IMG/VR virus record: IMGVR_UViG_3300023174_000039
Span: 1 to 64,000 of that record
DNA: 64,000 nt
Reading direction: 5' to 3' (one strand)
Part shown: positions 2,458 through 59,922 of the stretch, piece after piece
Numbering within the stretch: position 1 is the stretch's first letter
Layout of the letters: each line of letters begins with the position of its first letter
Notes under the pieces: generated by a model
Database searches by the model: none
What the model was told of the DNA's origin: nothing
Seen by the model: the letters and a program-made list of their open reading frames with translations, nothing else
Made by a program: the position numbers and the translations under genes

Positions 2458-3831
2458 TTAACTCGATTTCTGCCCAGGTCGTGTGTCAGGGAACGGCTTG
2501 GGAGCCTTGCCCCCATTTTGATCACCATTGTCTGCACGTGGTTTAAGCAACTCGCTCAAGCTCTGACGACTTGGAATGTTGCCAAGATCTGTTGTTGGCA
2601 CAGTGTATGTATTGTTAACGAAGCTGGACCGTAAAGTATTGTTGTTAGGCCCGTTGTTGAGATCTGTTCGTACATTCTCGGCAATTTTGTGCCAACGCCG
2701 GCCATCATAACGGAACATGCGATTTGGAAAATAATCTAATCTCAAAGTATAATCTCCAGCCACTGCGTCTAGTGGAAAACTCACACCGGCAGTGACAGGC
2801 AAACCATTTGGTGCGTGTGCGTCGCCAGTTAGGTAACCCGAAGTCCAGCCAAATCCATCTGGAGTAACACTCATACCGCCTTGTGTGCCATCCACTGTGT
2901 CGCCATCTATTGTGCTCAGTGATGTGGGATTAGCAGGTTGTCCGTCCAACAGTGTGGGTACAACATACAACGGCTTGTTGTCGTAGCCAGATTTTGGCAC
3001 TTCCACGTCGGCTTGTGCAAGGATAGCATCATTGAGTTGGTAATCTTTTTCTCGTGTGCCCTGTTTGTCACTGATGGTAGGCGGAGTGTACTCACGCCAG
3101 TAATCGGTATTGGTAATCGGTGTACCAGCAGGTGTGTTGACCCGGGCTTGATAATACACGTCACCAGCATTGACAATAGCACCAGCAGGATAAAAATCAC
3201 TTGGATCCCAAATGTATTCAGCCACAAATGGTTTGTTGGTGATCGAGTTGTATTCTTGTGCATCAGTCAGTGGTGTGGCTTTCACACGCCACAAGTGTGG
3301 TAACCAAGTTTGACTGAAACCTTCACTTGCAAATGCCGCATCTTGCACCACATAGTATTTGGGCAATGATCTACTTAGATCCTTGTTCAGGGGATTGTAG
3401 TCTCGTAAGTTTGGGACTTCAAGCACATCGCCACTCATGAGTTTGCGACCAAATGTGTCAATCATGTCATTGTAGTGAAACGTGATAAACAGGGTATCGT
3501 TGTTCAAAAACAATCCAAACTGACTCAAATCAAAGTCGATGTCTTGTGCATTATAAACACCACGCATGACATACACATCATCGTCATACACGCGATCTCT
3601 GTTTTCCAGCAACAGCAAATCTTGTATGTTCATAGGGTTGAGCTCGTCGTAAACAGGTTGTGTGGCATCACCGTTGCCGCTGAGTACAGAATCTTCGCCG
3701 CCAGTTTGCGGTCCCAGGTACTTGTGGACAAAGAGGTCAAGGCCACCAACAGTGTATTGCTCACTGATTGTGCGGTCTAGAAATTGGTAATCTCTAGTGC
3801 GATTGGGGCGGTATAGGCTTAAACGTGGCAT
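2458..3831 (-). CDS. gp14: Neck/head-closure protein (T4 gp14-like)
   Basis: DLSQFGL and GDVLEVP motifs plus position before the gp15-like gene; start set at MPRLSLY (3831), 5 nt after TATAAATA. Confidence 0.65.
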   Translation of the reverse strand: MPRLSLYRPNRTRDYQFLDRTISEQYTVGGLDLFVHKYLGPQTGGEDSVLSGNGDATQPVYDELNPMNIQDLLLLENRDRVYDDDVYVMRGVYNAQDIDFDLSQFGLFLNNDTLFITFHYNDMIDTFGRKLMSGDVLEVPNLRDYNPLNKDLSRSLPKYYVVQDAAFASEGFSQTWLPHLWRVKATPLTDAQEYNSITNKPFVAEYIWDPSDFYPAGAIVNAGDVYYQARVNTPAGTPITNTDYWREYTPPTISDKQGTREKDYQLNDAILAQADVEVPKSGYDNKPLYVVPTLLDGQPANPTSLSTIDGDTVDGTQGGMSVTPDGFGWTSGYLTGDAHAPNGLPVTAGVSFPLDAVAGDYTLRLDYFPNRMFRYDGRRWHKIAENVRTDLNNGPNNNTLRSSFVNNTYTVPTTDLGNIPSRQSLSELLKPRADNGDQNGGKAPKPFPDTRPGQKSS

Positions 3832-3836
3832 AATGT

Positions 3837-3844
3837 TATTTATA
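3837..3844 (-). promoter_or_regulatory. T4-type late promoter TATAAATA
   Basis: Exact TATAAATA on the minus strand, 5 nt before the ATG at 3831. Confidence 0.85.
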
Positions 3845-3852
3845 GCATTCGG

Positions 3853-3881
3853 TTGACTGAATATTCCCAAACTGCTATAAT
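3853..3881 (+). promoter_or_regulatory. Sigma70-type early promoter
   Basis: TTGACT-N17-TATAAT with extended -10 TG. Confidence 0.85.
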
Positions 3882-3909
3882 TAGCACTTAACAACAACGG
3901 GAGCCACCT

Positions 3910-4167
3910 ATGCTTACAGATGCACAAAGCGCACAAATTAATAATACTGAAGTATACACTTTAGATTATGAGGCAGAAGCCCTGCAAAGCTACGAGGACA
4001 CAGGCGAGGACTTAATGGACGAGCTGGAAGTTCGTGCCACTAATGTTATTTTGGAACAAACAGCCTGGGACGCTCGCGAGGACTTGGGCGGCATTACAGT
4101 TTACTTCCGAGATAGTACTTTAGTAGCATTTTACGATTACGAGCAGTTTCGCGGCACTGTGTTCTAA
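3910..4167 (+). CDS. Small highly acidic early protein
   Basis: 85-aa ORF with GGAG RBS directly after the early promoter; 19 D/E, 4 R, no K. Confidence 0.7.
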   Translation: MLTDAQSAQINNTEVYTLDYEAEALQSYEDTGEDLMDELEVRATNVILEQTAWDAREDLGGITVYFRDSTLVAFYDYEQFRGTVF

Positions 4168-4530: not shown

Positions 4531-4538
4531 GGAATATT

Positions 4539-5675
4539 ATGATTGCAACCAAACCCGTTAAACCCCTAAACCCTCGTAGTGCAGATACCAATGCCATGGG
4601 CATGGAGCCCACCTGGCGGGTGCAACCTACAGAAGGCCGTATCAGTGCCTTTAGTCATGCGTTCTCTTGGTACAACTACTTTTATGGTAAAAAAGATGCC
4701 CGTGAGATGATTGTAAATTACCTGGAAGCACACGGCCGCAAAGCAGATGTTCGCACACTCAAACGCATTCCAGACAGCTCAATCCGGTTGACCACAGGTT
4801 GGTTGTGCCGCATGAGCATGGTGGGTCTGGAGCTCACAGAACACGAACAGATCAAATTGGATAACTTGCTTAACGAAATTTTGGAATCCAAGCAAGATGA
4901 AGAAGCAGTGGTAGCACCTGTAGATGATTCAGTGCCAAAAATTACAATTCAGGACAGACTCCGGGAAAAGGTATCAGAGTGTGCAGGTGAACTGGACGGC
5001 TTGTTTGATGACTTTATTGCATCGGGTGCCAAACTCACGGCAGACTACAAACCCGTGGTACTCATGCGCAGTCTAAACATTGCTCCACAAATGGTCAATG
5101 ACATCAAACAAATCTGGACCCGTAAACTCACAGAGTTTGATGAAGCAGTAGCCGGCAAAGATGCAGACTTGTCACAGGGCTACAATTACTTGACCAAAAT
5201 ACAGTTAAAGAATTGCGTAAAGTTCTGTGAGCTTGTGATTTCGGACTGTGGTGCCTATGTGCAGATTAAAAAGGTTGAGCGCAAGCCGCGGGCAGTCAAG
5301 GCAGTGCCACCAGAGAAACGTGCCGCAAAGTTCAAGTGCATTACGGAATTTGCAGAGCTCAAACTCAAAGGTCTTCCTGCCGCAAGCCTAGTAGACAAAG
5401 CAGAAGCCTGGTTGTATGACACCAAAAAGCGCAAGCTGATCCACATTGTTGCTGACAGTCATGCACAGGCATTTACTGTAAAGAGCAACGCTATCATTGG
5501 ATTTAGCACAATAGAGAGCCAGCAAAAAACTGTGCGTAAGCCAGCAGAGATACTCAAAGCCATGGGCGCCGCAGGCAAGCCGGCTGCCAGGAAGATCTAC
5601 AAGGACTTGACCACTACAGAAACACCGTTTAACGGACGTGGCACAGAGAACTTGATCATTCTAAAAAGCTGGTAA
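4539..5675 (+). CDS. Hypothetical phage protein
   Basis: 378-aa ORF with AAGGA RBS; no recognisable motif. Confidence 0.8.
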   Translation: MIATKPVKPLNPRSADTNAMGMEPTWRVQPTEGRISAFSHAFSWYNYFYGKKDAREMIVNYLEAHGRKADVRTLKRIPDSSIRLTTGWLCRMSMVGLELTEHEQIKLDNLLNEILESKQDEEAVVAPVDDSVPKITIQDRLREKVSECAGELDGLFDDFIASGAKLTADYKPVVLMRSLNIAPQMVNDIKQIWTRKLTEFDEAVAGKDADLSQGYNYLTKIQLKNCVKFCELVISDCGAYVQIKKVERKPRAVKAVPPEKRAAKFKCITEFAELKLKGLPAASLVDKAEAWLYDTKKRKLIHIVADSHAQAFTVKSNAIIGFSTIESQQKTVRKPAEILKAMGAAGKPAARKIYKDLTTTETPFNGRGTENLIILKSW

Positions 5676-5695
5676 ATAAAGGGGACGGAGTCCCC
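5673..5695 (+). promoter_or_regulatory. Late promoter TAAATA followed by an RBS-occluding hairpin
   Basis: TAAATA 5673-5678; GGGGAC-GGA-GTCCCC stem 5681-5695 contains the GGAG SD. Confidence 0.7.
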
Positions 5696-5697
5696 CA

Positions 5698-6465
5698 ATG
5701 GCAGAACAGCAACAAAACACACTTGAGTCGCTCAAGCAAAACTTGATAGAATATGTAAAGCTTCAACTCGGTGATCAGATCATTGATCTCGAGTTGGACC
5801 CTGCACACTATGAAGCCGCCTATCAAAAAACACTAGGCACTTACCGCCAACGGGCCAGCAATGCCTATGAAGAAAGCTACAGCTTTATGGAACTGGTTAA
5901 AGATGTCAACATCTATCAGTTGCCACAAGAGGTTGTGAGTGTACGCCAGATATTCCGCAGACAGTTTGGTGATGCTACTGGACAAGCCAGTAACTTTGAT
6001 CCGTTCTCTCAGGCCAGCATGAATGTTTACCTAATGAACTTTAACGTAGCAGGCGGCCTTGCCACATACGACTTCTACAGCCAATACGTTGAACTGGCCG
6101 CACGTATGTTTGGCGGCTACATGAACTACACTTGGAATCCAGTTACCAAGAAAATTCAGCTGATTCGTGACCCAAGAGGCACAGGAGAGAATGTGTTGCT
6201 TTGGACATACAACCTAAAACCCGAAGTTAACTTGTTGCAAGACTTCCAAATTCAGCAATGGATCAAGGACTACATGGTTGCCAACTGTAAAATGATCATT
6301 GGTGAAGCACGTGAGAAGTTTGGTTCAATTGCCGGACCACAGGGCGGCGGTACACTAAACGGTGCCGCAATGAAAGCCGAAGCCAAAGAAGCTATCACAG
6401 CCCTAGAAGAACAGCTCAAGAACTACGTGGATGCCAGCCAACCACTTACTTGGGTAATTGGCTAA
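5698..6465 (+). CDS. gp13: Neck protein (T4 gp13-like)
   Basis: LQLGDQIIDLEL, WIKDYMVANCKMIIG and KF..GPQGGGTLNG match the gp13 pattern. Confidence 0.85.
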   Translation: MAEQQQNTLESLKQNLIEYVKLQLGDQIIDLELDPAHYEAAYQKTLGTYRQRASNAYEESYSFMELVKDVNIYQLPQEVVSVRQIFRRQFGDATGQASNFDPFSQASMNVYLMNFNVAGGLATYDFYSQYVELAARMFGGYMNYTWNPVTKKIQLIRDPRGTGENVLLWTYNLKPEVNLLQDFQIQQWIKDYMVANCKMIIGEAREKFGSIAGPQGGGTLNGAAMKAEAKEAITALEEQLKNYVDASQPLTWVIG

Positions 6466-6472: not shown

Positions 6473-6501
6473 TAGACTTGCGATAAAAATTCTGTTATAC
6501 T
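6473..6501 (+). promoter_or_regulatory. Sigma70-type promoter, probably leaderless
   Basis: TAGACT-N17-TATACT, 6 nt before the ATG at 6508. Confidence 0.6.
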
Positions 6502-6507
6502 TGCAGT

Positions 6508-7032
6508 ATGGCAGACTTAATGATCGACTTAGAAGGGCTTGCTACAGGCCCAGACACTACAATACTAACTATTGCGGCCCAGAGCTTTGACCCTTTTGGG
6601 CAAGGCCACTCTGGCCAGAGTTACTATGCCAGAGTCACACTAGAAAGCCAAGAAGATCGCGCTATTGATCAAGGCACAATTGATTGGTGGGCTACACAAC
6701 CTGCTGTGGTTCGAGACGAAGCATTCAATGAACAAGACCGCATCCCATTGGATCAAGCTCTAGATGGGTTAGGTCGGCTGATTTGGCACTCCAACAGAAT
6801 CTGGGCCCAAGGACCCACGTATGACATGAACATTCTGGAGCATGCCTACAAGAGCTATCGCAAGCCCTTGCCTTGGAAATACTACATGGTGCGTGATAGC
6901 CGTACGGTGTTTAGCTTGTGGCCTGATCAGCCTATCCCGCCCACCAGCCACCATGCCCTAGAAGACTGCCGCAGACAAATTGGCATGCTACAACACACAC
7001 TAAAACATCTTGGGGTTACTGCGCTGAAGTAG
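6508..7032 (+). CDS. DEDDh 3'-5' exonuclease (DexA/RNase AS-like)
   Basis: MIDLEGL, GPTYDM, RDSRT and HHALEDC motifs. Confidence 0.85.
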   Translation: MADLMIDLEGLATGPDTTILTIAAQSFDPFGQGHSGQSYYARVTLESQEDRAIDQGTIDWWATQPAVVRDEAFNEQDRIPLDQALDGLGRLIWHSNRIWAQGPTYDMNILEHAYKSYRKPLPWKYYMVRDSRTVFSLWPDQPIPPTSHHALEDCRRQIGMLQHTLKHLGVTALK

Positions 7033-8986
7033 GTTTAGGTCTTGACCAAGTACCACTGCCTGTCCACGGTAGCCTAAACGTAAATTCCTTACCAAATTCA
7101 ATTGGTGGATGGTCCTGACCGTCTATAAAAATCTCATGGTCAAAATCTGCAGTCCACTCACCACTGCTGTTGATGTTGAACTGATATCTGGCTCGATAGT
7201 AACTGTTTATTCTTGGCAAATTAAAAGCACCCAGTTCTTGTGTGTCATGTGCAGGGTCAAATTTTAAATCAAGTTCATACGGGCCCAACGCCAACCACAA
7301 CACACGAAGCAGCGGCCAGATTTCGTTGACCACAGTGACATTCAATGGATGGTCATCAATTTTAATAATGTTAAAATCAAACTGTTCATATGGTATATCT
7401 GTAATGATATTTTCAGGATCGTAACTGAGCGTGTAGTGTTCAGGCTTTTCCAGTCCTGGGCGCTCGTTCAGTGTTTCGTATGTTACACTGCGATTCTTAA
7501 TAAGATGATTGAGAATAACGTTGACAGACTTGTAGCGTATGAGACGTTGAAAAATAGTGTTGGTATAGTCGTCAGTTTTCCATTGATGTGTTAGATTGTG
7601 GTTGGAAATGCCAAATTTTGATCTTTCATAGTTCAGAGGAGTGTCCATGCCAATTTGGCAAGTGCCAAAACTACGCCCAAAAATATTACAATTACGTGTG
7701 CGCCACAACAAGGTCATGGTGTCAGCAACATCATTATATCCCTCGCCAGGAAATCCCACAAACCAATTTGTGTGTGACCGAATTCCTACAGTGGTAAAGT
7801 CTTTGAGATTTTGTTCTATATCATTGCGTTTGACATTCTTTTTCATGACGTCCAACACATGCTGGCTTCCTGACTCTACACCAAAACTCAGCATGTTGCA
7901 GCCACCGTTTTTGAGATCATTAATGTAGTCGAGATCCATGCGCCCGTCACATCTGGCGTACCCCATCCAACTCAGATGAATGTTTCGTTCAACCAATCCT
8001 TTTGCAAATGCACTTAGTTCTTTTAAATTGCCATTGATCAAACTGTCAATAAACCACACGCTGTCAATGCCCAAGGTTTTGTATTGGTGTTCTAATTCAT
8101 CCAGTATGTTGTTTGCTTGTCGGCCGCGGTATCTCCAAAATGTTGTTTCACTGCAAAACTGACATTTGGCCACACACCCGCGACTCAGTTCAGCACTTAC
8201 TCCATTTTGTTGATACAATGATAAATCTAAATCAGAGTAGTCTGGGTACGGCAAGCTGTCAAGATCAATACGTATGCTCTTGTCATGCACAAGGAATTTT
8301 TCAGTAACAGGAATGTTATTCTCAATCTTCTCCATCAAGTCCAAGAAAATTGCTTCGCCCTCTCCTACCACAATGTGGTCAATGATATCGGTGTTTTCTA
8401 TTTTTTCTTGAATAGCAGTTGGGCCGCCTGCTATAATAATAGTGTCGGGCAGCCTGCTACGAATTTGATTGATCATCCAGGTCGTGGCTTTGTTGCTGGT
8501 GGTAAAAATACTGAAGCCCATGACATCTGGTTTGAACGCCACAATCTTGTCAAGGTATTCATTCAGTATAGGTTCAATAAGAGGATGTACATCGGTGTAA
8601 TAACTGTCAGTGGTCCACACCCAGTCCTTGTATCCACTCCAGTACGCTTGATCTATTTTTGAATAACACACAGCATTGATATCGTATGCAACTGTTTCAA
8701 ATCCGCTATCTCGGCTGAGTGCAGTTATTCTAGCCAAATTGTAAGGAGGGATGTACGGAGCCCATTCAGGTAAAATAGCCAATGCCACACGAGTTTTTCG
8801 TGTCACTTGCCGATTGACCACTACCTGGGTTAGATTTTTTTGGGGCTTTGATCGGCCTGCACTGTCTAATTGCAATGCTTTGAGCATGGCCAAATCTCGA
8901 GCACCACCGTCGCTGTTGTTTACTATCTTGGTTAAATCAGGCTCAACTTTATCTGAAGTGGTCAATATATCAAATATTTTATTCAT
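7016..8986 (-). CDS. B12-binding domain radical SAM enzyme (class B methyltransferase-like)
   Basis: PDVMGFS and IIAGGP (B12-binding), SRGCVAKCQFC (CxxxCxxC), FGVESGSQHVL, VGFPGE. Confidence 0.9.
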   Translation of the reverse strand: MNKIFDILTTSDKVEPDLTKIVNNSDGGARDLAMLKALQLDSAGRSKPQKNLTQVVVNRQVTRKTRVALAILPEWAPYIPPYNLARITALSRDSGFETVAYDINAVCYSKIDQAYWSGYKDWVWTTDSYYTDVHPLIEPILNEYLDKIVAFKPDVMGFSIFTTSNKATTWMINQIRSRLPDTIIIAGGPTAIQEKIENTDIIDHIVVGEGEAIFLDLMEKIENNIPVTEKFLVHDKSIRIDLDSLPYPDYSDLDLSLYQQNGVSAELSRGCVAKCQFCSETTFWRYRGRQANNILDELEHQYKTLGIDSVWFIDSLINGNLKELSAFAKGLVERNIHLSWMGYARCDGRMDLDYINDLKNGGCNMLSFGVESGSQHVLDVMKKNVKRNDIEQNLKDFTTVGIRSHTNWFVGFPGEGYNDVADTMTLLWRTRNCNIFGRSFGTCQIGMDTPLNYERSKFGISNHNLTHQWKTDDYTNTIFQRLIRYKSVNVILNHLIKNRSVTYETLNERPGLEKPEHYTLSYDPENIITDIPYEQFDFNIIKIDDHPLNVTVVNEIWPLLRVLWLALGPYELDLKFDPAHDTQELGAFNLPRINSYYRARYQFNINSSGEWTADFDHEIFIDGQDHPPIEFGKEFTFRLPWTGSGTWSRPKPTSAQ

Positions 8987-8990
8987 AGTG

Positions 8991-8996
8991 TATTTA
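8991..8996 (-). promoter_or_regulatory. Late promoter TAAATA
   Basis: TAAATA 4 nt before the ATG at 8986. Confidence 0.65.
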
Positions 8997-9074
8997 CATC
9001 GTTGTCTCTAGACCATCAAATCAAACGGCTAATTGCCAGTTGATTTGTATTTTTGTTTGTGCTAATATACAACT

Positions 9075-9605
9075 ATGTCAACAACTCATACATCACATCT
9101 TCCAAAACTGCTAATCATCGGCAATGCTCGTCACGGCAAAGACACTGTGTGCGATATTCTGCGTAAAGAATTTGGTTACTCATTCCGTTCAAGCTCGGAC
9201 TTTTGTGCCGAAAAGTTTATCTACAACGAGCTCAAACTCAAGTACGGTTATACCTCCTATGCCCAGTGTTTTGAAGATCGACACAATCACAGAGCTGAGT
9301 GGTACAACATGATTCATGAATACTGTCGAGATGACTATGCTAGATTGGGTAGAGAAATTTTTGCTGAAAATTCTATCTATTGCGGTCTTCGCAACAAGTC
9401 AGAATTCCATGCTATGAAGAATACACAGGTATTTGATTATGCTGTTTGGGTGGATCGTAGCGACCACTTGCCTGTAGAAGATCGTTCAAGTATGAGCTTG
9501 GAAATTTGGATGGCCGACTACGTGATTGACAACAATGGTGGATTACAAGATCTGCGTCGCAATACCTGTGAATTAATGACCGCACTGTTAAAGATCCACA
9601 GATAG
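9075..9605 (+). CDS. Deoxynucleoside monophosphate kinase-like P-loop protein (T4 gp1-like)
   Basis: IIGNARHGKDT Walker A, GLRNKSEF, ADYVIDNNG. Confidence 0.7.
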   Translation: MSTTHTSHLPKLLIIGNARHGKDTVCDILRKEFGYSFRSSSDFCAEKFIYNELKLKYGYTSYAQCFEDRHNHRAEWYNMIHEYCRDDYARLGREIFAENSIYCGLRNKSEFHAMKNTQVFDYAVWVDRSDHLPVEDRSSMSLEIWMADYVIDNNGGLQDLRRNTCELMTALLKIHR

Positions 9606-9932
9606 ATCACCAGGTTTCCAGGGTAACGTGCTCTTAGACACTTCTTCTACGCAATTACGACAAATGCACTTTAGATTTTTGACACTAGTGTTGTTTAAGT
9701 TACCATCAACATGATATACTAGAATCTGACTAGAGTATCGGGCCTTAAACCCGCACTTGTCACACACGAGCTTTTTTTTAAATCCTGCGGCTTCCCATCG
9801 TGGGATTCTTTTTTTCAGCCCACGATGCTTCCTTGCACAACTCTCGCATCTGGTACGATAGTGTGCAACATCGTTACGATAATAGTTAACAGCACAAGGC
9901 AGTTGATTGCATGCTTGACAAATGGGTCTCAT
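9588..9932 (-). CDS. Zn-binding HNH-like endonuclease domain protein
   Basis: Several CxxC pairs and VYHVDGNLNNTSVKNLKCICRNC (degenerate HNH); TAAATA at 9937-9942. Confidence 0.7.
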   Translation of the reverse strand: MRPICQACNQLPCAVNYYRNDVAHYRTRCESCARKHRGLKKRIPRWEAAGFKKKLVCDKCGFKARYSSQILVYHVDGNLNNTSVKNLKCICRNCVEEVSKSTLPWKPGDLSVDL

Positions 9933-9995
9933 ACGGTATTTAGCACCAGGGCCTTTAATAAAGGGTACCGTAACGGCACCTTTTTAGCAGTTATC

Positions 9996-10003
9996 TATAA
10001 ATA
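9996..10003 (+). promoter_or_regulatory. T4-type late promoter TATAAATA
   Basis: Exact consensus upstream of the tail sheath gene. Confidence 0.85.
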
Positions 10004-10027
10004 TTGTATCTTGAAAAGGAATTGACC

Positions 10028-13000
10028 ATGGCTCTAGTATCACCAGGCGTAGAAGTAACAGTAATTGACGAAAGTCAGTATATCCCTTCTGCAGTAAACA
10101 CAGTACCGTATTTTTTAATCGCTACTGCTCAGAACAAAGTAAGCTCTAACGGTGTTACCGTTGCAGCTGGCACATTGGCAGCCAATGCCAATAAGACTTA
10201 TTTAATCACAAGTCAACGAGATTTGGCAGCCACATTTGGCGTGCCATTCTTCTATAAAACAACCACAGGTACCCCAATCAACGGTTACGAACTCAACGAG
10301 TACGGATTGTTGGCTGCATATTCAGCGTTGGGTATCACAAATCGTTGTTATGTGCAACGGGTTGACATTGACCTAACAGAGCTAACTGCTAGTTTGGTTC
10401 GTCCAACAGGCTCTCCTGCCAATGGCGACTACTGGTTAGACACAGGTACTAGTGTATGGGGTATACAAGAATACAACCAAGAAACCAACACGTTCATGGT
10501 TGAAACTCCAATGATTATTACTGATACTGCTGATGTAGTAGATCCAGACACTGATCCTGCCCCGTTGGCCACAATAGGCAGCATTGGTGACTACGCAGTG
10601 GTCACCTGTTCAGGAACTGCTCACAACACAATTTTTTACAAAAACTCCAACAACACTTGGGTTGAACTAGGTAGTGACGCCTGGAAAACATCTTGGCCCA
10701 CTATTGAAGGAACAGCAACTCCTACCAGTCTGACTGCTGCCTCAAGTATGTTTATCAATGACAGTGAAATATTTGTTCCGGCTTCTCCAAATAACACAGT
10801 GGCTGGCTTTGCAGGTGCAATCAATACTGCCTCCATTACCGGTGTTACTGCTGCCGCAGTAAGTGGTAAACTTTACATGTATGCTGATTCAACTGCTACC
10901 AATGATACTTCAACCCTGAATGGTGGTGTAATTTCCATTCAAACAGGGGCTTCAGCAGGCGCCGCATTGTTGACTGCTTTGGGAATTGACACAGGTGAAT
11001 TTAGAGCTCCTAACTATTTGCCATCATACAGTTATCAAGCACCACGTTGGGCAGTTGGGCAAACAGCACCAGCACCAACTGGGTCAGTTTGGAACAACCT
11101 TAGCCCAGCCAACAATGGACTGAGTTTACGAGTCAAGAAATACAGCACATCACTTGGTTCATTTATTACACAAGCATGTCCGGCATACTACTCAGATACT
11201 CAGGCAATTTATGCATTAGACCCAACAGGCGGTGGTAAAAACATTCCAGTTGGCACAACATATGTGTTATATGATGCTGGTTCGTACGGTAACCCGATCC
11301 CAACAGCTGAGTTTGAGATACTAGAAAGATATGCACTGGGTGCCACAATCATCACTGGAAATGTAACTAATCCAGTATTTGCGTCAGGAAACAGTTTTGA
11401 AATCTACGCAACAGAACCTGGCCAACCTGGTAACACATTTGGAACAGCTACCTTAACAGGAACTACACCAAGTGCATTTATCACAGCATTGAGTGCCGCT
11501 GCCATTCCTAATGTAAGTGCAAGCGTCAATAGCTCGGGCGCCCTGGTGATCACACATGCCACTGGTGGATCAGTCACATTGAAAAATATTTCAGGAACTC
11601 CTGTAACAGTAGCTGGATTCACGCCGGCTGTGGAAGGTGTTAGACCTACGCCAAAGCTGGCTGATGCAGTTACTTTGAGCAACTGGGTTGGTGCTCCAAC
11701 ATTCACATATACTGCCAGTAGCACAACACCTGACCAGGATCCAGTGAATGGTCGTTTATGGTATTATAGCACAGTTAGCGATGCTGATATCATGATTCAA
11801 AACAACGGACAATGGATTGGTTATCAAAATTGTACCAACGATGTTCGTGGATTTTCTCTAAATCTTACCAATGCCAGCGGCCCAATTATTGCAGCCACTG
11901 CACCAAAAACACAAAATAACACAGCTTTGTCTCCATTGGTACTGGGTGATTTGTGGATTGACACTAGCGATTTAGAAAATTATCCTAAATTGTATCGCTG
12001 GCAACCAGTTGACGGTGTTAATCAGTGGGTAGAGATTGACACAACTGACCAGGTTACACAAAGTGGTATCTTGTTTGCAGATGCACGTTGGGCACCAAAC
12101 GGCACAACTGATCCTGTAATGGATGCTATTCCCACTATCAACAGTTTGTTGACCAGTAATTATTTAGACCTAGATGCTCCAAATCCAGCACTATATCCAC
12201 AAGGCATGCTGTTGTTTAACACACGTCGCTCAGGATACAATGTCAAGAGTTTCCAGAGCAACTATTTCAATGCAACCAAATACCCAGCAGATCCTTGGGT
12301 AAATGTCACAAGCTACAGCATTGGAAGTTATGTCAGCTATTCAGGAACAAATTACATTTCGTTGCAGAACTTTAATCGTAACAATGTTCCGGGCACAACT
12401 GCATTCTGGACGCCAGTTACACAAACCAGCACATGGTTAACAGCCAGTGGCAACAGAGACACAGGTGCAATGTGGTCAGGTCGTCAAGCACAACGTCAGT
12501 TGGTTGTTCAAGCAATGAAAGCCGGTCTTGATGGTAGCTCAGCGGCACGTGAAGAACAAGCACAATTCAGTTTGATTGCCGCTACTGCTTACCCTGAGTT
12601 GATTCCCAACATGGTTGCACTCAGCAATGAACGCAACAACACATTGTTTGTGGTTGGTGACACACCAATGCGCCTTGAAGGCAACGGCACTGCACTAGCA
12701 GCCTGGGCGACCAACAATGGTGGATTAGGATTCCCAAGTGAGGACGGCTTGTTGACTGCTAGCCAGTACCTGGGTACATTCTGGCCAAGTTGCCAGACCA
12801 CAGACACAACTGGTAACCCAGTGGTGACAGCACCAAGTCACATGATGATGCGTACTATTATCCGCAGTGATGCAGTGAGCTATCCTTGGTTAGCACCTGC
12901 TGGCACACGTCGTGGTGTAGTTGACAATGCTGTTGCAATTGGTTATATTGATGCCATGTCAGGTGAATTCCAGCAGATCAATGTTGGCCAAGGACTACGT

Positions 13001-13459: not shown

Positions 13460-13493
13460 CAACTAAATAAACGTAACAGGAGATACCTACAAA

Positions 13494-14129
13494 ATGTCTA
13501 GTTCATCACTATCAAGAATGTCAGTCCCACTGGGAGGCCAGGCTGATCAGGGCTTGTTGATGCCCAAGCTCAAATATCGCTTCCGCGTATTTTTTGAGAA
13601 CTTTGGCGTGGCAAAACCCACAACAGAATTAACCAAACAAGTAATGACCTTTGCAAGACCTAATTTGAGTTTTGAAGAAGTCACTATTCCAATTTATAAC
13701 TCAACACTGAAGTTGGCCGGTAAACCTACCTGGCAAGACGTTGCCTGCGAAATTCGTGACGACGCCGCTGGTTCAGTTAGCAAGTTAGTTGGCGAGCAAA
13801 TGCAAAAGCAAATGGACTTCTTGGAAATGGCATCAGCCAGTTCTGGTATTGACTACAAGTTCTTGACACGTATTGAAATCCTTGACGGCGGCAACGGTGC
13901 TGCTGATCCAGTGGTTCTTGAGACATGGGAACTGTATGGTTGCTACCTGAAGTCAGCAGACTACGGTCAATTGAGTTATGCCGAAAGTGCAGTTGTTACA
14001 ATTAACTTGGGTATTGCGTATGATAACGCCAACCAAATTCCATCTGGCTCTAACGGTGCTGGTATTGGTGGTGCTATTGGCCGAACATTAGGCGACATTG
14101 TTACAGGTGCCGGCACAACAAACGGCTAA
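13494..14129 (+). CDS. gp19: Tail tube protein
   Basis: PKLKYRFRV, KLAGKPTWQ and WELYGCY; follows the sheath gene. Confidence 0.85.
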   Translation: MSSSSLSRMSVPLGGQADQGLLMPKLKYRFRVFFENFGVAKPTTELTKQVMTFARPNLSFEEVTIPIYNSTLKLAGKPTWQDVACEIRDDAAGSVSKLVGEQMQKQMDFLEMASASSGIDYKFLTRIEILDGGNGAADPVVLETWELYGCYLKSADYGQLSYAESAVVTINLGIAYDNANQIPSGSNGAGIGGAIGRTLGDIVTGAGTTNG

Positions 14130-16095: not shown

Positions 16096-16110
16096 TCCAT
16101 AAATATCCGC

Positions 16111-16599
16111 ATGACGCGGAAATTAGAAGACCTTTTTGACTTACCCTCTTCGGTTGAAATTGAAACCAAAGACGACGCCCCCACCATTGAAGAAGCACAA
16201 ACACAACTGGCTGCAATAGACATAGCCATTGACAAGATTGACACAGCATTGCCTGCTGTTAAAGATCTAAGTGCCAGTGACACTGAGATGGACGAACTAG
16301 CAAACTTGGCAAAAGACAGCTATAAAGATCTCATGGATCTTGGCATGCAAGTAGATTCACGCTTTGCCAGCGAGATATTCAATGTAGCAGGCACTATGTT
16401 AGGCCATGCTATCACTGCTAAAACAGCCAAAATGAACAAGAAACTCAAGGTTATTGATCTACAGTTGAAGAAAATGCGACTGGATCAACAAACGCCAGCC
16501 GACGAACAAATAGCCACAGCACAAGGTCAAGTGTTGAATCGCAACGATTTATTGGAACGTTTACTTAAAGGTAAAGACCAAAATAACGGAAAAGTATAA
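16111..16599 (+). CDS. Putative terminase small subunit
   Basis: Helical 162-aa protein with central two-helix and coiled-coil pattern, late promoter 16100-16105, upstream of terL; weak motif evidence. Confidence 0.45.
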   Translation: MTRKLEDLFDLPSSVEIETKDDAPTIEEAQTQLAAIDIAIDKIDTALPAVKDLSASDTEMDELANLAKDSYKDLMDLGMQVDSRFASEIFNVAGTMLGHAITAKTAKMNKKLKVIDLQLKKMRLDQQTPADEQIATAQGQVLNRNDLLERLLKGKDQNNGKV

Positions 16600-16619
16600 A
16601 TATACAATAGGATACTGAC

Positions 16620-17228
16620 ATGAAACCATTTGCAAAATATCTATTAGAAAGTGACCGCACTTATGCGTATCGCATCAAAGTAGTGGGCGATATACCCAAG
16701 GACTTCTTCAAACAGTTTGAAGAAAAACTCAGCCAATTTGACATTGCTAAAATGTCAACTCCAAAGAGTACTCCGGTACGTGCTGTGATCCCTGACTTCC
16801 CTGCTTTCCCCAATCAATCTGTAACACGAGTTGATGTAGAGTTCAAGTATCCTGCTATTGAACCACAGATCAAACAGATTGCTAGATTACTGGGACTAGA
16901 TGAAAATCGTATTGTGATGATGACCACACCATACGAAGAAAGTCTAGACACTGAGTCAGTCAAGATTACTGACCAAAACAAAGACCTGTTGGATGATCCT
17001 GATTATCCTGCAGATGACAAATTGCAAAAGAATCTCAAGAAAGACTATTCAGCAGAGCCACACAACCATGTGGTCTTAAAGAATGCCTATCGTTCAAACT
17101 TTTCAGTGGCTGGTGGAAAAACACCTGCTGCTAAGACCTCTAATGATTTGCCAATGGGAACCAAAAGCCCAATGACCAACGTAAAGAGACCACCCAAGCC
17201 TGCTACCGGCGCACAACCAAGAGGATAA
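16620..17228 (+). CDS. Probable internal head protein
   Basis: TATAAATA 16595-16602; N-terminus MKPFAKYLLE resembles a T4 capsid-targeting/cleavage sequence. Confidence 0.6.
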   Translation: MKPFAKYLLESDRTYAYRIKVVGDIPKDFFKQFEEKLSQFDIAKMSTPKSTPVRAVIPDFPAFPNQSVTRVDVEFKYPAIEPQIKQIARLLGLDENRIVMMTTPYEESLDTESVKITDQNKDLLDDPDYPADDKLQKNLKKDYSAEPHNHVVLKNAYRSNFSVAGGKTPAAKTSNDLPMGTKSPMTNVKRPPKPATGAQPRG

Positions 17229-17232
17229 TCCA

Positions 17233-19263: not shown

Positions 19264-19267
19264 CATC

Positions 19268-20500: not shown

Positions 20501-20521
20501 CCCAGGGCAACTAAATACCCA

Positions 20522-21337: not shown

Positions 21338-21370
21338 TTGACCCCTGGTATCAGGCATGTAAATAACTGC

Positions 21371-22516: not shown

Positions 22517-22520
22517 TAGC

Positions 22521-24792: not shown

Positions 24793-24802
24793 ATATACAA
24801 CT

Positions 24803-32142: not shown

Positions 32143-32162
32143 TACTGTGTTTAAATAGCAGT

Positions 32163-42531: not shown

Positions 42532-42566
42532 GACTTTGTGACTGTGCTACTGTATAATCTTAAATA
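42530..42566 (+). promoter_or_regulatory. Tandem sigma70-type and late promoter
   Basis: TTGACT-N17-TATAAT, then TAAATA 42561-42566, 6 nt before the ATG. Confidence 0.75.
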
Positions 42567-42572
42567 CATAAC

Positions 42573-46455: not shown

Positions 46456-46484
46456 TTGACTTTTACTACAAAATACTGTAATAT
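46456..46484 (+). promoter_or_regulatory. Sigma70-type promoter, probably leaderless
   Basis: TTGACT-N17-TAATAT, 6 nt before the ATG at 46491. Confidence 0.65.
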
Positions 46485-46490
46485 ACAATT

Positions 46491-46991
46491 ATGCGAATAC
46501 TAACACTAGATAACCAACACTATGACCTTGATCACTTGCCTGAAGAGGTGGATGACATGAGGTTTGCCATACTAGATAACTCTAATCCAGCAGATCCTGA
46601 CTATCACTTTATTCCTTTGATCTTCTTGGAAAGTTTTAACTCACCGGCCTTGGTGTTGCGCATAGGCGATAACACAATCAAGATGCCCATGGACTGGCAA
46701 GTGTTAATTGGAGAACCCGAGATTGGCGACCTAGAAGTACTGCCCTTGACCAGCATCAATGATCGTGGATTCAAGGTATTCCAGTTTAACCCTTTAACTA
46801 GTTTCCGTCCCAGTTTTCCTGACATTGAGATCCTGGATGTGTATCATGAAGTATCTTGGTATGCCCCCAAACTCAAGAATGGACAAATGCTTGCGGTGCC
46901 AATCACAGATGGTGACGAACCAGAATGTGTGTACTTTGTCAAAGACATCAGTCGCAACTGCGAGATTGTGGATTATAACAAGGCTTGGTAA
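46491..46991 (+). CDS. Hypothetical beta-rich protein (possible degenerate Hint fold)
   Basis: 166-aa ORF with its own promoter; the fold assignment is speculative. Confidence 0.7.
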   Translation: MRILTLDNQHYDLDHLPEEVDDMRFAILDNSNPADPDYHFIPLIFLESFNSPALVLRIGDNTIKMPMDWQVLIGEPEIGDLEVLPLTSINDRGFKVFQFNPLTSFRPSFPDIEILDVYHEVSWYAPKLKNGQMLAVPITDGDEPECVYFVKDISRNCEIVDYNKAW

Positions 46992-51255: not shown

Positions 51256-51607
51256 TTGACTTGCGTTTGCTTTTCTTGCGAGATATATCCAGTAGACTGC
51301 AAGCAGGGCCATGTAATATTTCTAAATCTTTGTTGACAAAAGTGCGTAGTGTGTAGCGGAAAGGTTCCCACTCTGTGCGCAAAAATATGTTGATAGGAAT
51401 AGATCTGTTGCTCTCCCACCACCAGGTTGTGGCCAGCTCTAAGAATTTCATCTTGTTTTCCGGCAATAGTATGCTACCAAAGTCGTAGATAGTTGTGACT
51501 GTGTCGTCCCTGTTCTGTACAATGCCCACATACTCAGCGTTTGCATACACGCACAGCGTGATAAACGGATACTTTTCCGTCAGTTTGTCAAAGATATTGT
51601 TGCCCAT
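51230..51607 (-). CDS. Hypothetical protein
   Basis: 125-aa ORF filling the gap; basic C-terminus. Confidence 0.75.
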   Translation of the reverse strand: MGNNIFDKLTEKYPFITLCVYANAEYVGIVQNRDDTVTTIYDFGSILLPENKMKFLELATTWWWESNRSIPINIFLRTEWEPFRYTLRTFVNKDLEILHGPACSLLDISRKKSKRKSITLVRRLD

Positions 51608-51619
51608 AAATATTGTTCT

Positions 51620-52690
51620 ATGTATTCCACTACAGCATACTTATATCAGCAAATCACCAGAGTGTTATTGATTGACACCAGCGGTGGCTATTTCACAGCG
51701 AGGTACGATCCAGTGTACGCAAAACAACTAACAGTAAACAAAGGTGTTGACAACGTTCTACTCTTTGAATTTATCAATCAGGAACAAAAACCTGTAAACA
51801 TCACCGGCAGCACTTTTGTGTTCCGTATGATCAGCCAAAACGGCGATGTACTACTACTCAGCAAACGGATGGAAACACTCAGTGCCGCACTTGGCAGAGT
51901 CAAGGTAGTGCTAACAACTGAAGACACTATTGATTTAACAGCACAACCTGCCAGTTACAGTATCCAACGCACATCGGGTGATTATGTTCAAGCTGTGTAC
52001 ACAGATGCCAATTCGCAAGCTCGAGCAGACTGCAACATTGTGGATTCAATACTGCCCGAATTTCAAGACAGTGCCAATTTAACTATTCCCACAATTTATG
52101 GACCAAATGCATGGCCACAAAGTCCACCAAGTAGTTGGCCTGATTGGGCACTTACACCGCAGCCATTGAACGCCGCACATGCAACAGAATTTTATTCAAG
52201 CCAAATTCCCACACATGGTGCCAGCTTGACCACAATCAAAATGGATCTAACACATTACACAGGCACAATCAAAGCACAAGCCGCACAGGACTATGAAGCA
52301 CCATGGTATGATGTAACAGATTCAACACAGTACATGGATGCAACAGAAAGCATTTATCTTAATGTGGTTGGGTTCCATCCCTTGATACGTGTGGCATTTA
52401 ACCAAAGTCAAGGATGGGGCGCCACTGCCACTGCCACTGTGGTCAATGGAGTGGTCACAGGTATCACGGTCAACAACACCGGACAACGCTATATTGCCGC
52501 ACCAAATGTAATGATTATTGGCAACGGTGCAGGAGCCCGAGCAATAGGCAGCGTGGGGGCAGATGGCGGAATTGGTCCAATCACCGTGACTGATGGCGGC
52601 AACGGTTATCTACCTGTGACGTTTGGCAATCCGGTCTACGCTAGTGTTGTCATAAACAACGGCACTGTTACCAATTTGATGTATCGTTGA
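51620..52690 (+). CDS. Virion structural protein (baseplate/tail-associated)
   Basis: TAAATA 51607-51612; C-terminal VTGITVNNTGQRYIAAP and ITVTDGGNGY repeats typical of T4-like structural proteins. Confidence 0.65.
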   Translation: MYSTTAYLYQQITRVLLIDTSGGYFTARYDPVYAKQLTVNKGVDNVLLFEFINQEQKPVNITGSTFVFRMISQNGDVLLLSKRMETLSAALGRVKVVLTTEDTIDLTAQPASYSIQRTSGDYVQAVYTDANSQARADCNIVDSILPEFQDSANLTIPTIYGPNAWPQSPPSSWPDWALTPQPLNAAHATEFYSSQIPTHGASLTTIKMDLTHYTGTIKAQAAQDYEAPWYDVTDSTQYMDATESIYLNVVGFHPLIRVAFNQSQGWGATATATVVNGVVTGITVNNTGQRYIAAPNVMIIGNGAGARAIGSVGADGGIGPITVTDGGNGYLPVTFGNPVYASVVINNGTVTNLMYR

Positions 52691-58961: not shown

Positions 58962-59024
58962 TTTTTGCCAAAAGGCTAAATAAAAGCAGACCCACTGTGG
59001 TCACAAACTTAAAGGAAATTCATC

Positions 59025-59426
59025 ATGGCATATTTAATCCCCGTAAATGGCGATTCACAACCAGTATTCGCAATCGACGTACTGAACGGCCCTGTAAGCG
59101 CATCAGCTTCCACAGCCGCTACACCAGTTAACCTAGCTGGTCCTAAACTAGACTTCTTCCGTGCTGTCGCCAACACCACTGTTGTTTCACAACAAGGTGT
59201 GCAAGAGTATGTTGGAAACGTTATTCAAGCTATCCAACAAACTGCTACAGTTGCAATGTATCAAGTTGACGGCACAGTGTTGAGCTTTGCTACGTACCCA
59301 ACAGGTGCGTTTGCTAATGCTACAACAAACACCAGCGCCGCTACCTTCTTGGCCGCTGCCAACGTAACCTACACAGGTTACCAGTTAGACAGTTGCACCA
59401 GCGTTGGCTTCAAGCTATCGACCTAA
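59025..59426 (+). CDS. Small structural protein, probably abundant (possible capsid decoration)
   Basis: Own late promoter (58977-58982), AAGGA RBS and own terminator; A/T/V-rich. Confidence 0.6.
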   Translation: MAYLIPVNGDSQPVFAIDVLNGPVSASASTAATPVNLAGPKLDFFRAVANTTVVSQQGVQEYVGNVIQAIQQTATVAMYQVDGTVLSFATYPTGAFANATTNTSAATFLAAANVTYTGYQLDSCTSVGFKLST

Positions 59427-59445
59427 TCAATCTTTGATTAACAAC

Positions 59446-59476
59446 AAGCCCGGCTTAGAAATATCCCGGGCTTTTT
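59446..59476 (+). terminator. Rho-independent terminator
   Basis: AAGCCCGG/CCGGGCTT stem followed by a T run. Confidence 0.8.
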
Positions 59477-59499
59477 GTTGGCCGTTAAATACTCCTATA

Positions 59500-59922
59500 A
59501 TGCGAATACTCTGTAGAACTCTTTTTGATTGCTCGGCCACTGGCATCACTGGTCATTATAGACCCAGCCAGATACCATTTACGGATGGTGCTGGCAACAC
59601 AATTAAAAATCAGCACGACTGGACATTTGCCAGGAATCAGCAACGCAATTGGGAAACTCTGAATCAACTGATCAGCTTGCGTACACAACCAGTGGATGTT
59701 GTGCCCTTGGGATGTGATTCGGGCATTTGGCATTTTGAATTTGAAGTTGAACACGGAGAAGTATACAGCACTACTGGATATGTAGGTGACTTGACTGGCT
59801 TGGTAAATGAATGTGCTGGTGTGCCTATGTTGACAGGACTGACAGAAAAGTTAACTGAGCAAGCTGTATTAGTAACCCAAGGCGCAGATCAGAACATTTG
59901 GTTTGAACCCATAAATAAATGA
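59500..59922 (+). CDS. Hypothetical late protein
   Basis: Start at MRILCRTLFD, 8 nt after TAAATA 59486-59491. Confidence 0.7.
   Translation: MRILCRTLFDCSATGITGHYRPSQIPFTDGAGNTIKNQHDWTFARNQQRNWETLNQLISLRTQPVDVVPLGCDSGIWHFEFEVEHGEVYSTTGYVGDLTGLVNECAGVPMLTGLTEKLTEQAVLVTQGADQNIWFEPINK

What the first reader, a model, noticed from the sequence alone, without database searches (positions are those of the whole stretch)
3831..59502. Late genes appear to be systematically leaderless (TAAATA-N4-8-ATG)
At least 11 genes have TAAATA only 4-8 nt before the ATG and no Shine-Dalgarno. The ATGs are at 3831(-), 8986(-), 9932(-), 16111, 20522, 21371, 24803, 32163, 42573, 51620 and 59500. T4 late transcription starts about 6 nt after TATAAATA, so +1 would fall on or beside the start codon. 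By contrast, likely high-copy structural genes (sheath, tube, 59025) keep leaders with an SD. Inference: a two-tier translation strategy, and a promoter-plus-start unit of about 12 nt that lets newly acquired genes join the late programme.
Basis: partly seen in the sequence, partly recalled or inferred. Interest (0 to 1): 0.62.

Follow-up and report, generated by a model that had tools for sequence, protein, structure and literature searches.

The report
Promoters fused to start codons
In this 332-kb uncultured jumbo phage and its relatives, about one gene in eight has a promoter element placed so close to its ATG that the mRNA should start at or within 3 bases of the start codon, with no ribosome-binding site; T4, GAP32 and PA5oct do not do this.

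Summary
Genome-wide (331,654 bp, 361 genes called independently of the motif), TAAATA is the commonest hexamer just upstream of start codons. It occurs at 32 genes, against 1.4 +/- 1.2 in dinucleotide shuffles, with spacing peaking at 4-5 nt. Only 1 of 34 has a Shine-Dalgarno (SD).

A second group has TAAATA 16-30 nt upstream with an SD in between, and no gene falls at 9-15 nt. The phage encodes a T4 gp55-family late sigma factor. In T4 geometry +1 is the 6th base after the box, which for a 5-nt spacer is the A of ATG.

Orthologues in about 60 related metagenomic contigs keep both motif and spacing (33/33, 12/12). Five large relatives show the same enrichment. T4, GAP32, PA5oct, Atu_ph07 and a Vibrio jumbo phage do not.

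Canonical sigma70 promoters (TTGACN-N17-TATAAT) lie exactly 6 nt from the ATG of 11 or more replication genes, so the leaderless layout is not confined to late genes.

No RNA data could be found, so transcript 5' ends are inferred. I rate this a new variant of known things (T4-type late promoters, leaderless mRNAs).

The parts
3829..3842 (-). TAAATA (3837-3842) + 5 nt + ATG (3831); virion structural protein, 457 aa; lies in a 78-nt divergent intergenic region
8984..8996 (-). TAAATA (8991-8996) + 4 nt + ATG (8986); 656-aa protein; divergent intergenic region
9930..9942 (-). TAAATA (9937-9942) + 4 nt + ATG (9932); 114-aa HNH-like protein; back to back with the sheath promoter
16100..16113 (+). 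TAAATA + 5 nt + ATG (16111); 162-aa protein; orthologues keep a 4-5-nt spacing (5/5)
20512..20524 (+). TAAATA + 4 nt + ATG (20522); nuclease, 271 aa
21360..21373 (+). TAAATA + 5 nt + ATG (21371); radical SAM protein, 381 aa; 16/22 relatives keep a 4-5-nt spacing
24790..24805 (+). TAAATA + 7 nt + ATG (24803); virion protein, 655 aa; the TAA doubles as the stop of the upstream ORF; motif and 7-nt spacer kept in 33/33 orthologues (48-83% aa identity)
32152..32165 (+). TAAATA + 5 nt + ATG (32163); nucleotidyltransferase-like protein, 251 aa; 12/12 orthologues keep the 5-nt spacing
42561..42575 (+). TAAATA + 6 nt + ATG (42573); radical SAM protein, 375 aa; the profile match from residue 1 supports this start
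51607..51622 (+). TAAATA + 7 nt + ATG (51620); 356-aa protein with a C-terminal virion/baseplate-like domain
59486..59502 (+). TAAATA + 8 nt + ATG (59500); 140-aa ORF with weak coding score; a terminator-like hairpin and T-run lie just upstream
9996..10030 (+). Late promoter with leader: TATAAATA (9996-10003) + 24 nt containing AAAGGAA + ATG (10028) of the tail sheath
13464..13496 (+). Late promoter with leader: TAAATA + 24 nt containing AGGAG + ATG (13494). The tube gene (14136) follows as the second gene, without its own SD
5673..5700 (+). Late promoter with leader: TAAATA + 19 nt (GGAG) + ATG (5698); head-tail adaptor-like protein
16597..16622 (+). Late promoter with leader: TAAATA + 17 nt (AGGA) + ATG (16620); orthologues keep a 17-18-nt spacing (6/6)
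60611..60642 (+). Late promoter with leader: TAAATA + 23 nt (GAGGA) + ATG (60640); virion structural protein
6473..6510 (+). Sigma70-type leaderless unit: TAGACT-N17-TATACT + 6 nt + ATG (6508); exonuclease
9040..9077 (+). Sigma70-type leaderless unit: TTGATT-N17-TAATAT + 6 nt + ATG (9075); dNMP kinase-like protein
46456..46493 (+). Sigma70-type leaderless unit: TTGACT-N17-TAATAT + 6 nt + ATG (46491); conserved phage protein
52691..52728 (+). Sigma70-type leaderless unit: TTGATC-N17-TATACT + 6 nt + ATG (52726); DNA primase

Best explanation
TAAATA is the core (-11 to -6) of this phage's late promoter. It is read by host RNA polymerase carrying the phage's gp55-family sigma factor and needs no -35 element.

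At about 34 genes the box lies 4-8 nt (mostly 4-5) from the ATG. Transcription should therefore begin on the A of the start codon, or at most 3 nt before it. The mRNA is then leaderless, has no SD, and would be translated through its 5'-terminal AUG.

At about 27 other genes the same box lies 16-30 nt upstream, and the short leader opens almost at once with an SD.

A second promoter class, host sigma70-type TTGACN-N17-TATAAT in front of replication and nucleotide-metabolism genes, is fused to ATGs in the same way, at exactly 6 nt.

What is shown:
- the motif, its spacing and its statistics;
- the lack of an SD at the proximal genes;
- conservation of motif and spacing across the clade;
- the presence of a gp55 homologue.

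What is inferred:
- that the box is a promoter;
- where +1 falls;
- that the ATG-proximal genes are translated as leaderless mRNAs;
- the timing of expression.
For: 1. Enrichment and spacing. 32 genes carry the box at 4-8 nt, against 1.4 +/- 1.2 in shuffles. TAAATA ranks first of 4096 hexamers. The distribution is bimodal, with an empty 9-15-nt zone. That is what a start about 5-6 nt after the box predicts: leaders of 4-10 nt are too short to hold an SD and too long to count as leaderless. In the 17-19-nt cases the SD begins 6-9 nt after the box.

2. SD content. An SD is present in 1/34 proximal genes and 22/27 distal genes.

3. Sigma factor. The gp55-family protein matches phrog_12791 at E=7e-72, at G000:C1:303045-303944. 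T4 pocket residues N13, Y97 and T99 are conserved and H95 is F. In the T4 structure the A bases at -12, -9 and -8 are flipped out, which places the box at -13 to -6 (PMC7892883).

4. Internal calibration. Sigma70 -10 hexamers show a sharp spike at exactly 6 nt: 11 genes, against 2 at 5 nt and 0 at 7 nt. Ten of them have TTGAC-type -35 boxes at 17 bp. This is the canonical geometry that puts +1 on the A of ATG.

5. Position. Seven of 34 proximal sites lie in divergent intergenic regions. One is a 48-nt gap (185573(-)/186326(+)) that holds two opposed TAAATA-N4-ATG units.

6. Conservation. Orthologues keep box and spacer at 33/33, 12/12 and 5/5 genes. Genes without the box stay without it. Raw pattern counts in five large relatives are 36/5, 37/13, 22/6, 14/6 and 16/1 against the reversed control.

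7. Start-site context. The base before the ATG is a pyrimidine in 10/11 sites with a 5-nt spacer and 6/6 with a 7-nt spacer (listing; 32/33 and 25/27 unique contexts when relatives are included). This fits the pyrimidine(-1)/purine(+1) preference of RNA polymerase start sites (my own knowledge).

8. Start codon. 33/34 proximal genes start with ATG.
Against: - There is no transcript evidence. No RNA run could be listed, so +1 is inferred from T4 and sigma70 geometry.
- The A at -12, which T4 gp55 binds in a deep pocket, is not conserved here (A in about 40% of sites).
- The 4-8-nt window is also where an SD would lie, so a role at the mRNA level cannot be formally excluded.
- Most proximal genes lie in same-strand clusters with short gaps (median 30 nt) and could also be read from upstream transcripts. 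Only 4/34 follow a terminator-like hairpin, which is not an enrichment.
- With 7-8-nt spacers, a conserved A at spacer position 5 suggests a 3-nt leader rather than none.
- The first 39 nt of proximal genes are not significantly less structured than those of other genes (p=0.054).
- No T4-type gp45 clamp was found with phrog_223. The host is unknown.
Confidence: 0.7

Rival explanations
1. TAAATA 4-8 nt before the ATG acts on the mRNA, not the DNA. It would be an A/U-rich substitute for an SD, read by the ribosome (for example through S1, or through a ribosome carrying the phage's own bS21) within polycistronic transcripts.
For: - The spacing window equals that of an SD.
- Most proximal genes lie in same-strand clusters with short gaps.
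- The phage encodes bS21, a platform protein near the anti-SD.
- Only 4/34 sites follow a terminator-like hairpin.
Against: - The same hexamer stands 16-30 nt upstream of genes that have their own SD, with nothing at 9-15 nt.
- Seven sites lie in divergent intergenic regions where a new transcript must start.
- Unmistakable sigma70 promoters with -35 boxes show the same fusion to ATG at their own class-specific distance.
- A gp55-family sigma is present.
- bS21 is also encoded by PA5oct, Atu_ph07 and Vibrio phage 2.275.O, which lack the pattern.
Confidence: 0.12
2. TAAATA is a late promoter, but its closeness to the ATG is only a by-product of very short intergenic regions. The first gene would not be translated from that transcript; it would be translated from read-through mRNA, by coupling to the upstream gene.
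For: - The genome is compact (93% coding).
- In 9/34 sites the TAA of the box is the stop codon of the upstream gene.
- The median gap is 30 nt.
Against: - Compaction does not predict a sharp 4-5-nt peak with none at 0-1 nt or 9-15 nt, even where gaps are 50-700 nt.
- It does not predict exact conservation of spacer length gene by gene down to 48% protein identity.
- It does not predict the absence of the pattern in T4, GAP32 and PA5oct, which are equally compact.
- Divergent sites have no upstream gene to couple to.
Confidence: 0.1
3. The pattern is chance, a composition effect, or an artefact of choosing start codons.
For: - A 6-mer made of A and T is expected often in A/T-rich intergenic DNA.
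- My gene calls are home-made and wrong in places (the sheath, 9075 and 42573 starts were mis-called).
Against: - Dinucleotide shuffles give 1.4 against 32 observed.
- The test without gene calls gives the same answer.
- Start choice ignored upstream sequence.
- Profile alignments confirm several N-termini.
- The pattern is conserved in relatives and absent from T4, GAP32 and PA5oct under the same procedure.
Confidence: 0.01

Closest known systems
Bacteriophage T4 late promoters (TATAAATA at -13 to -6, read by gp55 with gp33 and the gp45 clamp)
   Same: - Single A/T-rich -10-like box with no -35 element.
- A gp55-family sigma is encoded, with pocket residues N13, Y97 and T99 kept.
- The box stands before sheath, baseplate, adaptor, portal and fibre genes.
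   Different: - Only the last six bases (TAAATA) are conserved. The full 8-mer is not enriched.
- More than half of the boxes lie 4-8 nt from the ATG. In T4 none does: its boxes lie 12-30 nt upstream.
- The gp55 homologue is 299 aa, with an insert of about 165 aa.
- No T4-type gp45 was found.
Predicted late promoter ATAAATA of the Rak2-like jumbo phages CBB and GAP32 (PMC5259590)
   Same: - Distantly related jumbo myoviruses (sheath 45% identity over part of its length).
- A gp55-like sigma, with no gp33 or gp45 homologues reported.
- An ATAAATA-type box before structural genes.
   Different: In GAP32, run through the same procedure, TAAATA lies 17-45 nt upstream of starts and never at 4-8 nt. 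The raw pattern is below its control.
'-10 region adjacent to ORFs' leaderless expression in Deinococcus-Thermus (PMC12340547), and classical leaderless mRNAs such as lambda cI
   Same: A -10 element a few bp before the start codon, no SD, and a third motif-free class with SD. That paper showed experimentally that the element acts as a promoter, not as a ribosome-binding site. The sigma70-type units here (TTGACN-N17-TATAAT-N6-ATG) have the same architecture.
   Different: - That pattern is in a cellular genome, uses the housekeeping sigma, and belongs to a phylum where leaderless mRNAs are the norm.
- Here it is a phage-encoded gp55-type promoter class as well as a sigma70-type class.
- The genome otherwise uses strong AAGGAG SDs.
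- The host is unknown.
Jumbo phages with mapped transcription starts (phiKZ, AR9)
   Same: Large phage genomes with short promoter motifs specific to each temporal class.
   Different: - phiKZ: no leaderless transcript was detected (PMC8244752).
- AR9: 5' UTRs are 26-491 nt long (PMC5312081).
- Both use their own multisubunit RNA polymerases rather than a gp55-type sigma.

Membership tests
T4-type (gp55-dependent) late promoter | The phage encodes a gp55-family sigma factor | tested here: met
   phrog_12791 'sigma factor for late transcription', E=7e-72, at G000:C1:303066-303887. T4 gp55 matches it at E=7e-7. N13, Y97 and T99 are conserved and H95 is F.
T4-type (gp55-dependent) late promoter | 8-bp TATAAATA box | tested here: not met
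   The 8-mer is not enriched (15 copies against 16 in the control). Only TAAATA is invariant. The positions matching T4 -13 and -12 are unconserved.
T4-type (gp55-dependent) late promoter | No conserved -35 element | tested here: met
   Base counts for the 14 nt upstream of the box are flat in both site classes, and the aligned listing shows nothing conserved further upstream.
T4-type (gp55-dependent) late promoter | Precedes virion and other late genes | tested here: inconclusive
   Sheath, adaptor, gp6-like wedge, fibres, portal, gp25-like wedge and virion proteins carry it. So do radical SAM enzymes, phosphoesterases, a nuclease and thymidylate synthase. Timing is unknown.
T4-type (gp55-dependent) late promoter | Co-activator gp33 and sliding clamp gp45 | tested here: inconclusive
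   phrog_223 (gp45) gave no hit, and the tool's control matched in none of its 14 genomes, so the blank is weak. gp33 was not searched.
T4-type (gp55-dependent) late promoter | Transcription starts about 6 nt after the box | not testable with these tools
   No RNA run was listed.
Leaderless mRNA | Primary 5' end at, or within a few nt of, the start codon | not testable with these tools
   No RNA data. This is inferred from promoter geometry only.
Leaderless mRNA | A -10 element at the class-specific distance from the start codon | tested here: met
   TAAATA peaks at 4-5 nt. Sigma70 -10 hexamers spike at exactly 6 nt.
Leaderless mRNA | No Shine-Dalgarno sequence | tested here: met
   An SD of at least 4 nt is present in 1/34 proximal genes, against 22/27 genes with the distal box.
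Leaderless mRNA | AUG start codon | tested here: met
   33/34 proximal genes start with ATG. The one TTG case (106032, 3-nt spacer) is doubtful.

The most novel reading that the evidence does not exclude
This freshwater jumbo-phage clade has tied its transcription programme to a separate, SD-independent translation channel. Both promoter classes are fused to start codons. The phage's own bS21, itself expressed from a TAAATA promoter with an SD, would remodel host ribosomes late in infection so that 5'-AUG mRNAs are favoured. That would add a layer of temporal control at translation. The 12-15-nt promoter-plus-start cassette would also work as a portable expression unit for mobile and duplicated genes (two homing endonucleases and three radical SAM paralogues carry it).
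Probability: 0.1. Interest if true: 0.8.

Novelty: new variant of a known kind. Interest (0 to 1): 0.6.

Why it matters
- **A new arrangement.** gp55-type late promoters and leaderless mRNAs are each well known. I found no description of them fused, in T4-like or jumbo phages, in the papers searched. T4, GAP32 and PA5oct lack the arrangement under the same test.
- **Scale.** If the 5' ends are confirmed, about 13% of the genes of a widespread clade of uncultured freshwater jumbo phages bypass SD-dependent initiation, in a genome that otherwise uses strong SDs.
- **Annotation.** Start codons in such genomes can be fixed from promoter geometry. Gene finders that expect an SD will mis-call them, as mine did for three genes.
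- **Engineering.** The layout gives a minimal expression cassette of about 12-15 nt.
- **Phage biology.** It raises a testable question: do phage-encoded ribosomal proteins alter the choice between SD-led and leaderless mRNAs?

Tried and rejected
- **RNA evidence.** The look-up of sequencing runs listed no run holding window 16000-25999 as RNA.
- **Near-identical phages.** Megablast of 12 kb against GenBank phages gave no match.
- **Motif avoidance.** TAAATA is depleted in coding sequence on both strands (40 and 35 copies, against about 96 and 105 under synonymous-codon shuffling). Other TA-containing A/T hexamers are equally depleted, with ratios of 0.33-0.5, so this is not specific evidence and I dropped it.
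- **Terminators.** A hairpin plus T-run within 110 nt upstream occurs at 4/34 proximal genes, against 25/299 others. That is no meaningful enrichment.
- **5' structure.** The MFE of +1 to +39 is slightly weaker in proximal genes (-2.6 against -3.5 kcal/mol), which is not significant (p=0.054).
- **bS21 as the explanation.** It is present in all 5 clade relatives but also in PA5oct, Atu_ph07 and Vibrio phage 2.275.O, which lack the pattern. It is therefore not sufficient.
- **IF3.** No IF3 C-terminal domain is encoded.
- **Host.** Terminase relatives lie on short contigs binned with Aquiluna, Lishizhenia, Polynucleobacter, Legionellales, Chitinophaga and Crocinitomicaceae MAGs. These are mutually inconsistent, so I make no host call.
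- **Stop-codon overlap.** The TAA of the box is the upstream stop in only 9/34 sites.
- **phiYS40.** The Thermus phage phiYS40 paper, which I recall as reporting leaderless middle and late mRNAs, is not held. That comparison rests on memory only and is not used as evidence.
Full report
**What the window is.** The window is the first 64 kb of a 331,654-bp IMG/VR phage record (GC 44%, CheckV completeness 95%). No near-identical GenBank phage exists. Its tail sheath is 33-47% identical to those of the jumbo myoviruses PA5oct, Atu_ph07, Vibrio phage 2.275.O, SCTP-2 and the Rak2-like phages. These are the distant T4-related jumbo group. I took the whole genome and called 361 genes (93% coding) with a home-made codon model. 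Starts were chosen from coding score alone, blind to upstream sequence.

**The observation.** Genome-wide, TAAATA is the most frequent of all hexamers 2-10 nt upstream of starts: 34 genes against 0.83 expected, more than any SD hexamer. At 4-8 nt there are 32 genes, against 1.39 +/- 1.19 (maximum 5) in 300 dinucleotide-preserving shuffles of the upstream 60-mers.

A test without gene calls agrees. Of 170 TAAATA copies on both strands, 47 are followed by ATG at 4-8 nt, against 19 for the reversed pattern. Of those 47, 37 open an ORF of at least 60 codons, against a 21% baseline.

The spacing histogram is 4:10, 5:11, 6:3, 7:6, 8:2 and zero from 9 to 15. A second mode of about 27 genes follows at 16-30 nt. 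An SD of at least 4 nt is present in 1/34 proximal genes and in 22/27 distal genes. Nothing outside the six bases is conserved, and the T4 8-mer TATAAATA is not enriched.

**What the box is.** The genome encodes a gp55-family late sigma factor (phrog_12791, E=7e-72, G000:C1:303045-303944). Aligned with T4 gp55, it keeps N13, Y97 and T99, while H95 is F. In the cryo-EM structure these residues form the pockets for the flipped A bases at -12, -9 and -8. Those positions fix the T4 box at -13 to -6, so +1 is the 6th base after the final A.

Transferred here, a 5-nt spacer puts +1 on the A of ATG. A 4-nt spacer puts the A one base nearer. A 7-8-nt spacer leaves 2-3 nt of leader.

The empty 9-15-nt zone then makes sense. 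Leaders of 4-10 nt could neither hold an SD at working distance nor count as leaderless. In the 17-19-nt cases the SD begins 6-9 nt after the box, right at the predicted 5' end. The base before the ATG is a pyrimidine in 10/11 sites with a 5-nt spacer and 6/6 with a 7-nt spacer. The 7-nt spacers also carry a conserved A at position 5, so a 3-nt leader is likely there.

Canonical sigma70 promoters are also fused to start codons. Hexamers of the TATAAT type show a spike at exactly 6 nt before first ATGs of long ORFs: 11 genes, against 2 at 5 nt and 0 at 7 nt. Ten of these have a TTGAC-type -35 box at 17 bp.

Six nt after a -12 to -7 hexamer is +1. Here the elements are unambiguously promoters, and the ATG lies at the start site. 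These genes are an exonuclease, a dNMP kinase-like protein, a primase, an endonuclease, an SbcD-like nuclease and a GIY-YIG endonuclease. They look like the early or replication class. Four lie in the window (ATGs at 6508, 9075, 46491 and 52726). The leaderless layout is therefore a genome-wide habit with two promoter classes, each at its own class-specific distance. It is not a property of late genes only.

**Position and conservation.** Seven of 34 proximal sites lie in divergent intergenic regions. These include 3831(-), 8986(-) and 9932(-) in the window. Another is a 48-nt gap at 185573(-)/186326(+) that holds two opposed TAAATA-N4-ATG units and little else.

A search of IMG/VR with the 655-aa virion protein of 24803 returned 61 related loci. 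In every distinct one, down to 48% protein identity, the orthologue keeps TAAATA and a 7-nt spacer while the flanks diverge. Orthologue tables give:
- 33/33 with a 7-nt spacer for the 24803 gene;
- 12/12 with a 5-nt spacer for 32163;
- 5/5 with a 4-5-nt spacer for 16111;
- 6/6 with a 17-18-nt spacer for the SD-led 16620.

Genes without the box stay without it. In 37 dereplicated loci TAAATA is again the top hexamer, and 86 of its 266 copies lie 4-8 nt before a first ATG. In five large relatives the raw pattern against its reversed control is 36/5, 37/13, 22/6, 14/6 and 16/1.

The same raw count is at or below control in T4, PA5oct, Vibrio phage 2.275.O, GAP32 and Atu_ph07. With the full procedure, T4, GAP32 and PA5oct have 0-1 boxes at 4-8 nt. 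Their TAAATA copies lie 12-45 nt upstream. The fusion is therefore specific to this clade.

**Which genes.**
- Proximal (leaderless) genes: portal, a gp25-like wedge protein, several virion proteins, three radical SAM proteins, two metallophosphoesterases, a nuclease, a nucleotidyltransferase-like protein, two homing or HNH endonucleases and thymidylate synthase.
- Distal (SD-led) genes: sheath, head-tail adaptor, a gp6-like wedge protein, fibre-like and other virion proteins, a 1092-aa tape-measure or hub-like protein, and the phage's bS21.
- The likely scaffold and capsid genes (319750 and 320867) have strong SDs, inside an operon that starts at a distal box.

The 'late' label for the enzymes is unverified. 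The tube gene has no SD of its own.

**Rival explanations.**
- An mRNA-level SD substitute is the main rival, because the window coincides with SD spacing and the phage encodes bS21. It does not explain the distal mode, the divergent sites, the analogous sigma70 spike or the gp55 homologue. bS21 is also present in PA5oct, Atu_ph07 and Vibrio phage 2.275.O, which lack the pattern.
- A pure compaction by-product does not explain the sharp, gene-specific, conserved spacing.
- Chance is excluded.

**Checks that gave nothing.** Motif depletion in coding sequence is not specific. Terminator association and 5' structure are not significant. The host is unresolved. No RNA run was listed.

**Comparison with what is known.** gp55-type late promoters are classical (PMC2988020, PMC7892883). 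An ATAAATA late box and a gp55-like sigma were predicted for CBB and GAP32 (PMC5259590). A '-10 region adjacent to ORFs' that gives leaderless mRNAs was shown experimentally in Deinococcus-Thermus (PMC12340547). Mapped jumbo phages show no leaderless transcripts (phiKZ) or long 5' UTRs (AR9). Searches for leaderless mRNAs together with late promoters, jumbo phages or cyanophages found no description of this fusion.

**Verdict.** I rate it a new variant of known kinds. My confidence in the mechanism is about 0.7, pending 5'-end mapping.

Noticed in passing
G000:C1:85205-85429 (+), outside the window; locus L131: The phage encodes ribosomal protein bS21 (PF01165, 61 bits, above the curated cut-off). 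The gene lies behind TAAATA-N24 with an AAGGAG SD. bS21 is also present in 5/5 clade relatives and in PA5oct, Atu_ph07 and Vibrio phage 2.275.O, but not in T4 or GAP32.
   Followed up: partly
G000:C1 about 216,868-225,113 (loci L124 and L125): There are 24 tRNA genes in two clusters, covering all 20 amino acids except Phe and including three tRNA-Met(cat).
   Followed up: no
whole genome G000: RCGCGY occurs once and AGCGCT never in 331 kb, although CGCG occurs 204 times and GCGC 480 times. This looks like avoidance of specific restriction sites (MluI/BssHII-like and Eco47III-like).
   Followed up: partly
window 9937-10003: Two late boxes stand back to back in one 95-nt intergenic region. TAAATA(-) is 4 nt from the HNH-like gene's ATG (9932). 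TATAAATA(+) is 24 nt from the sheath ATG (10028). A similar but tighter pair lies at G000:C1:186278-186325.
   Followed up: yes
G000:C1:303045-303944 (+): The gp55 homologue is 299 aa, against 185 aa in T4. T4 residues 7-20 align to its residues 10-23, and T4 residues 43-115 align to 188-258. That implies an insert of about 165 aa of unknown function. The next gene (303957, SbcD-like) is a sigma70-type leaderless unit.
   Followed up: partly
window 21371-22516, 42573-43700 and 48364-49866; G000:C1:114057-115184 (-): There are four radical SAM paralogues (phrog_14086). Three of them have TAAATA 4-6 nt from the ATG.
   Followed up: no
window 17233-19263: A 676-aa protein carries a segment of about 60 aa (residues 371-437) that is 70-76% identical to a segment in T4-like cyanophage proteins (S-RIM32, S-PM2). 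The rest of the protein has no match.
   Followed up: no
G000:C1:214089-216000: Near-identical sigma70 promoters (TTGACC-N17-TATAAT, shared spacer ending ...gatttgc) are repeated before several small ORFs. In three cases ATG directly abuts TATAAT, so the true starts there are unclear.
   Followed up: no
loci L137-L142 (genome contigs): Contigs carrying close terminase relatives are binned into MAGs of six unrelated taxa (Actinomycetota, Bacteroidota and Pseudomonadota lineages). This is probably mis-binning of phage contigs and gives no host signal.
   Followed up: no
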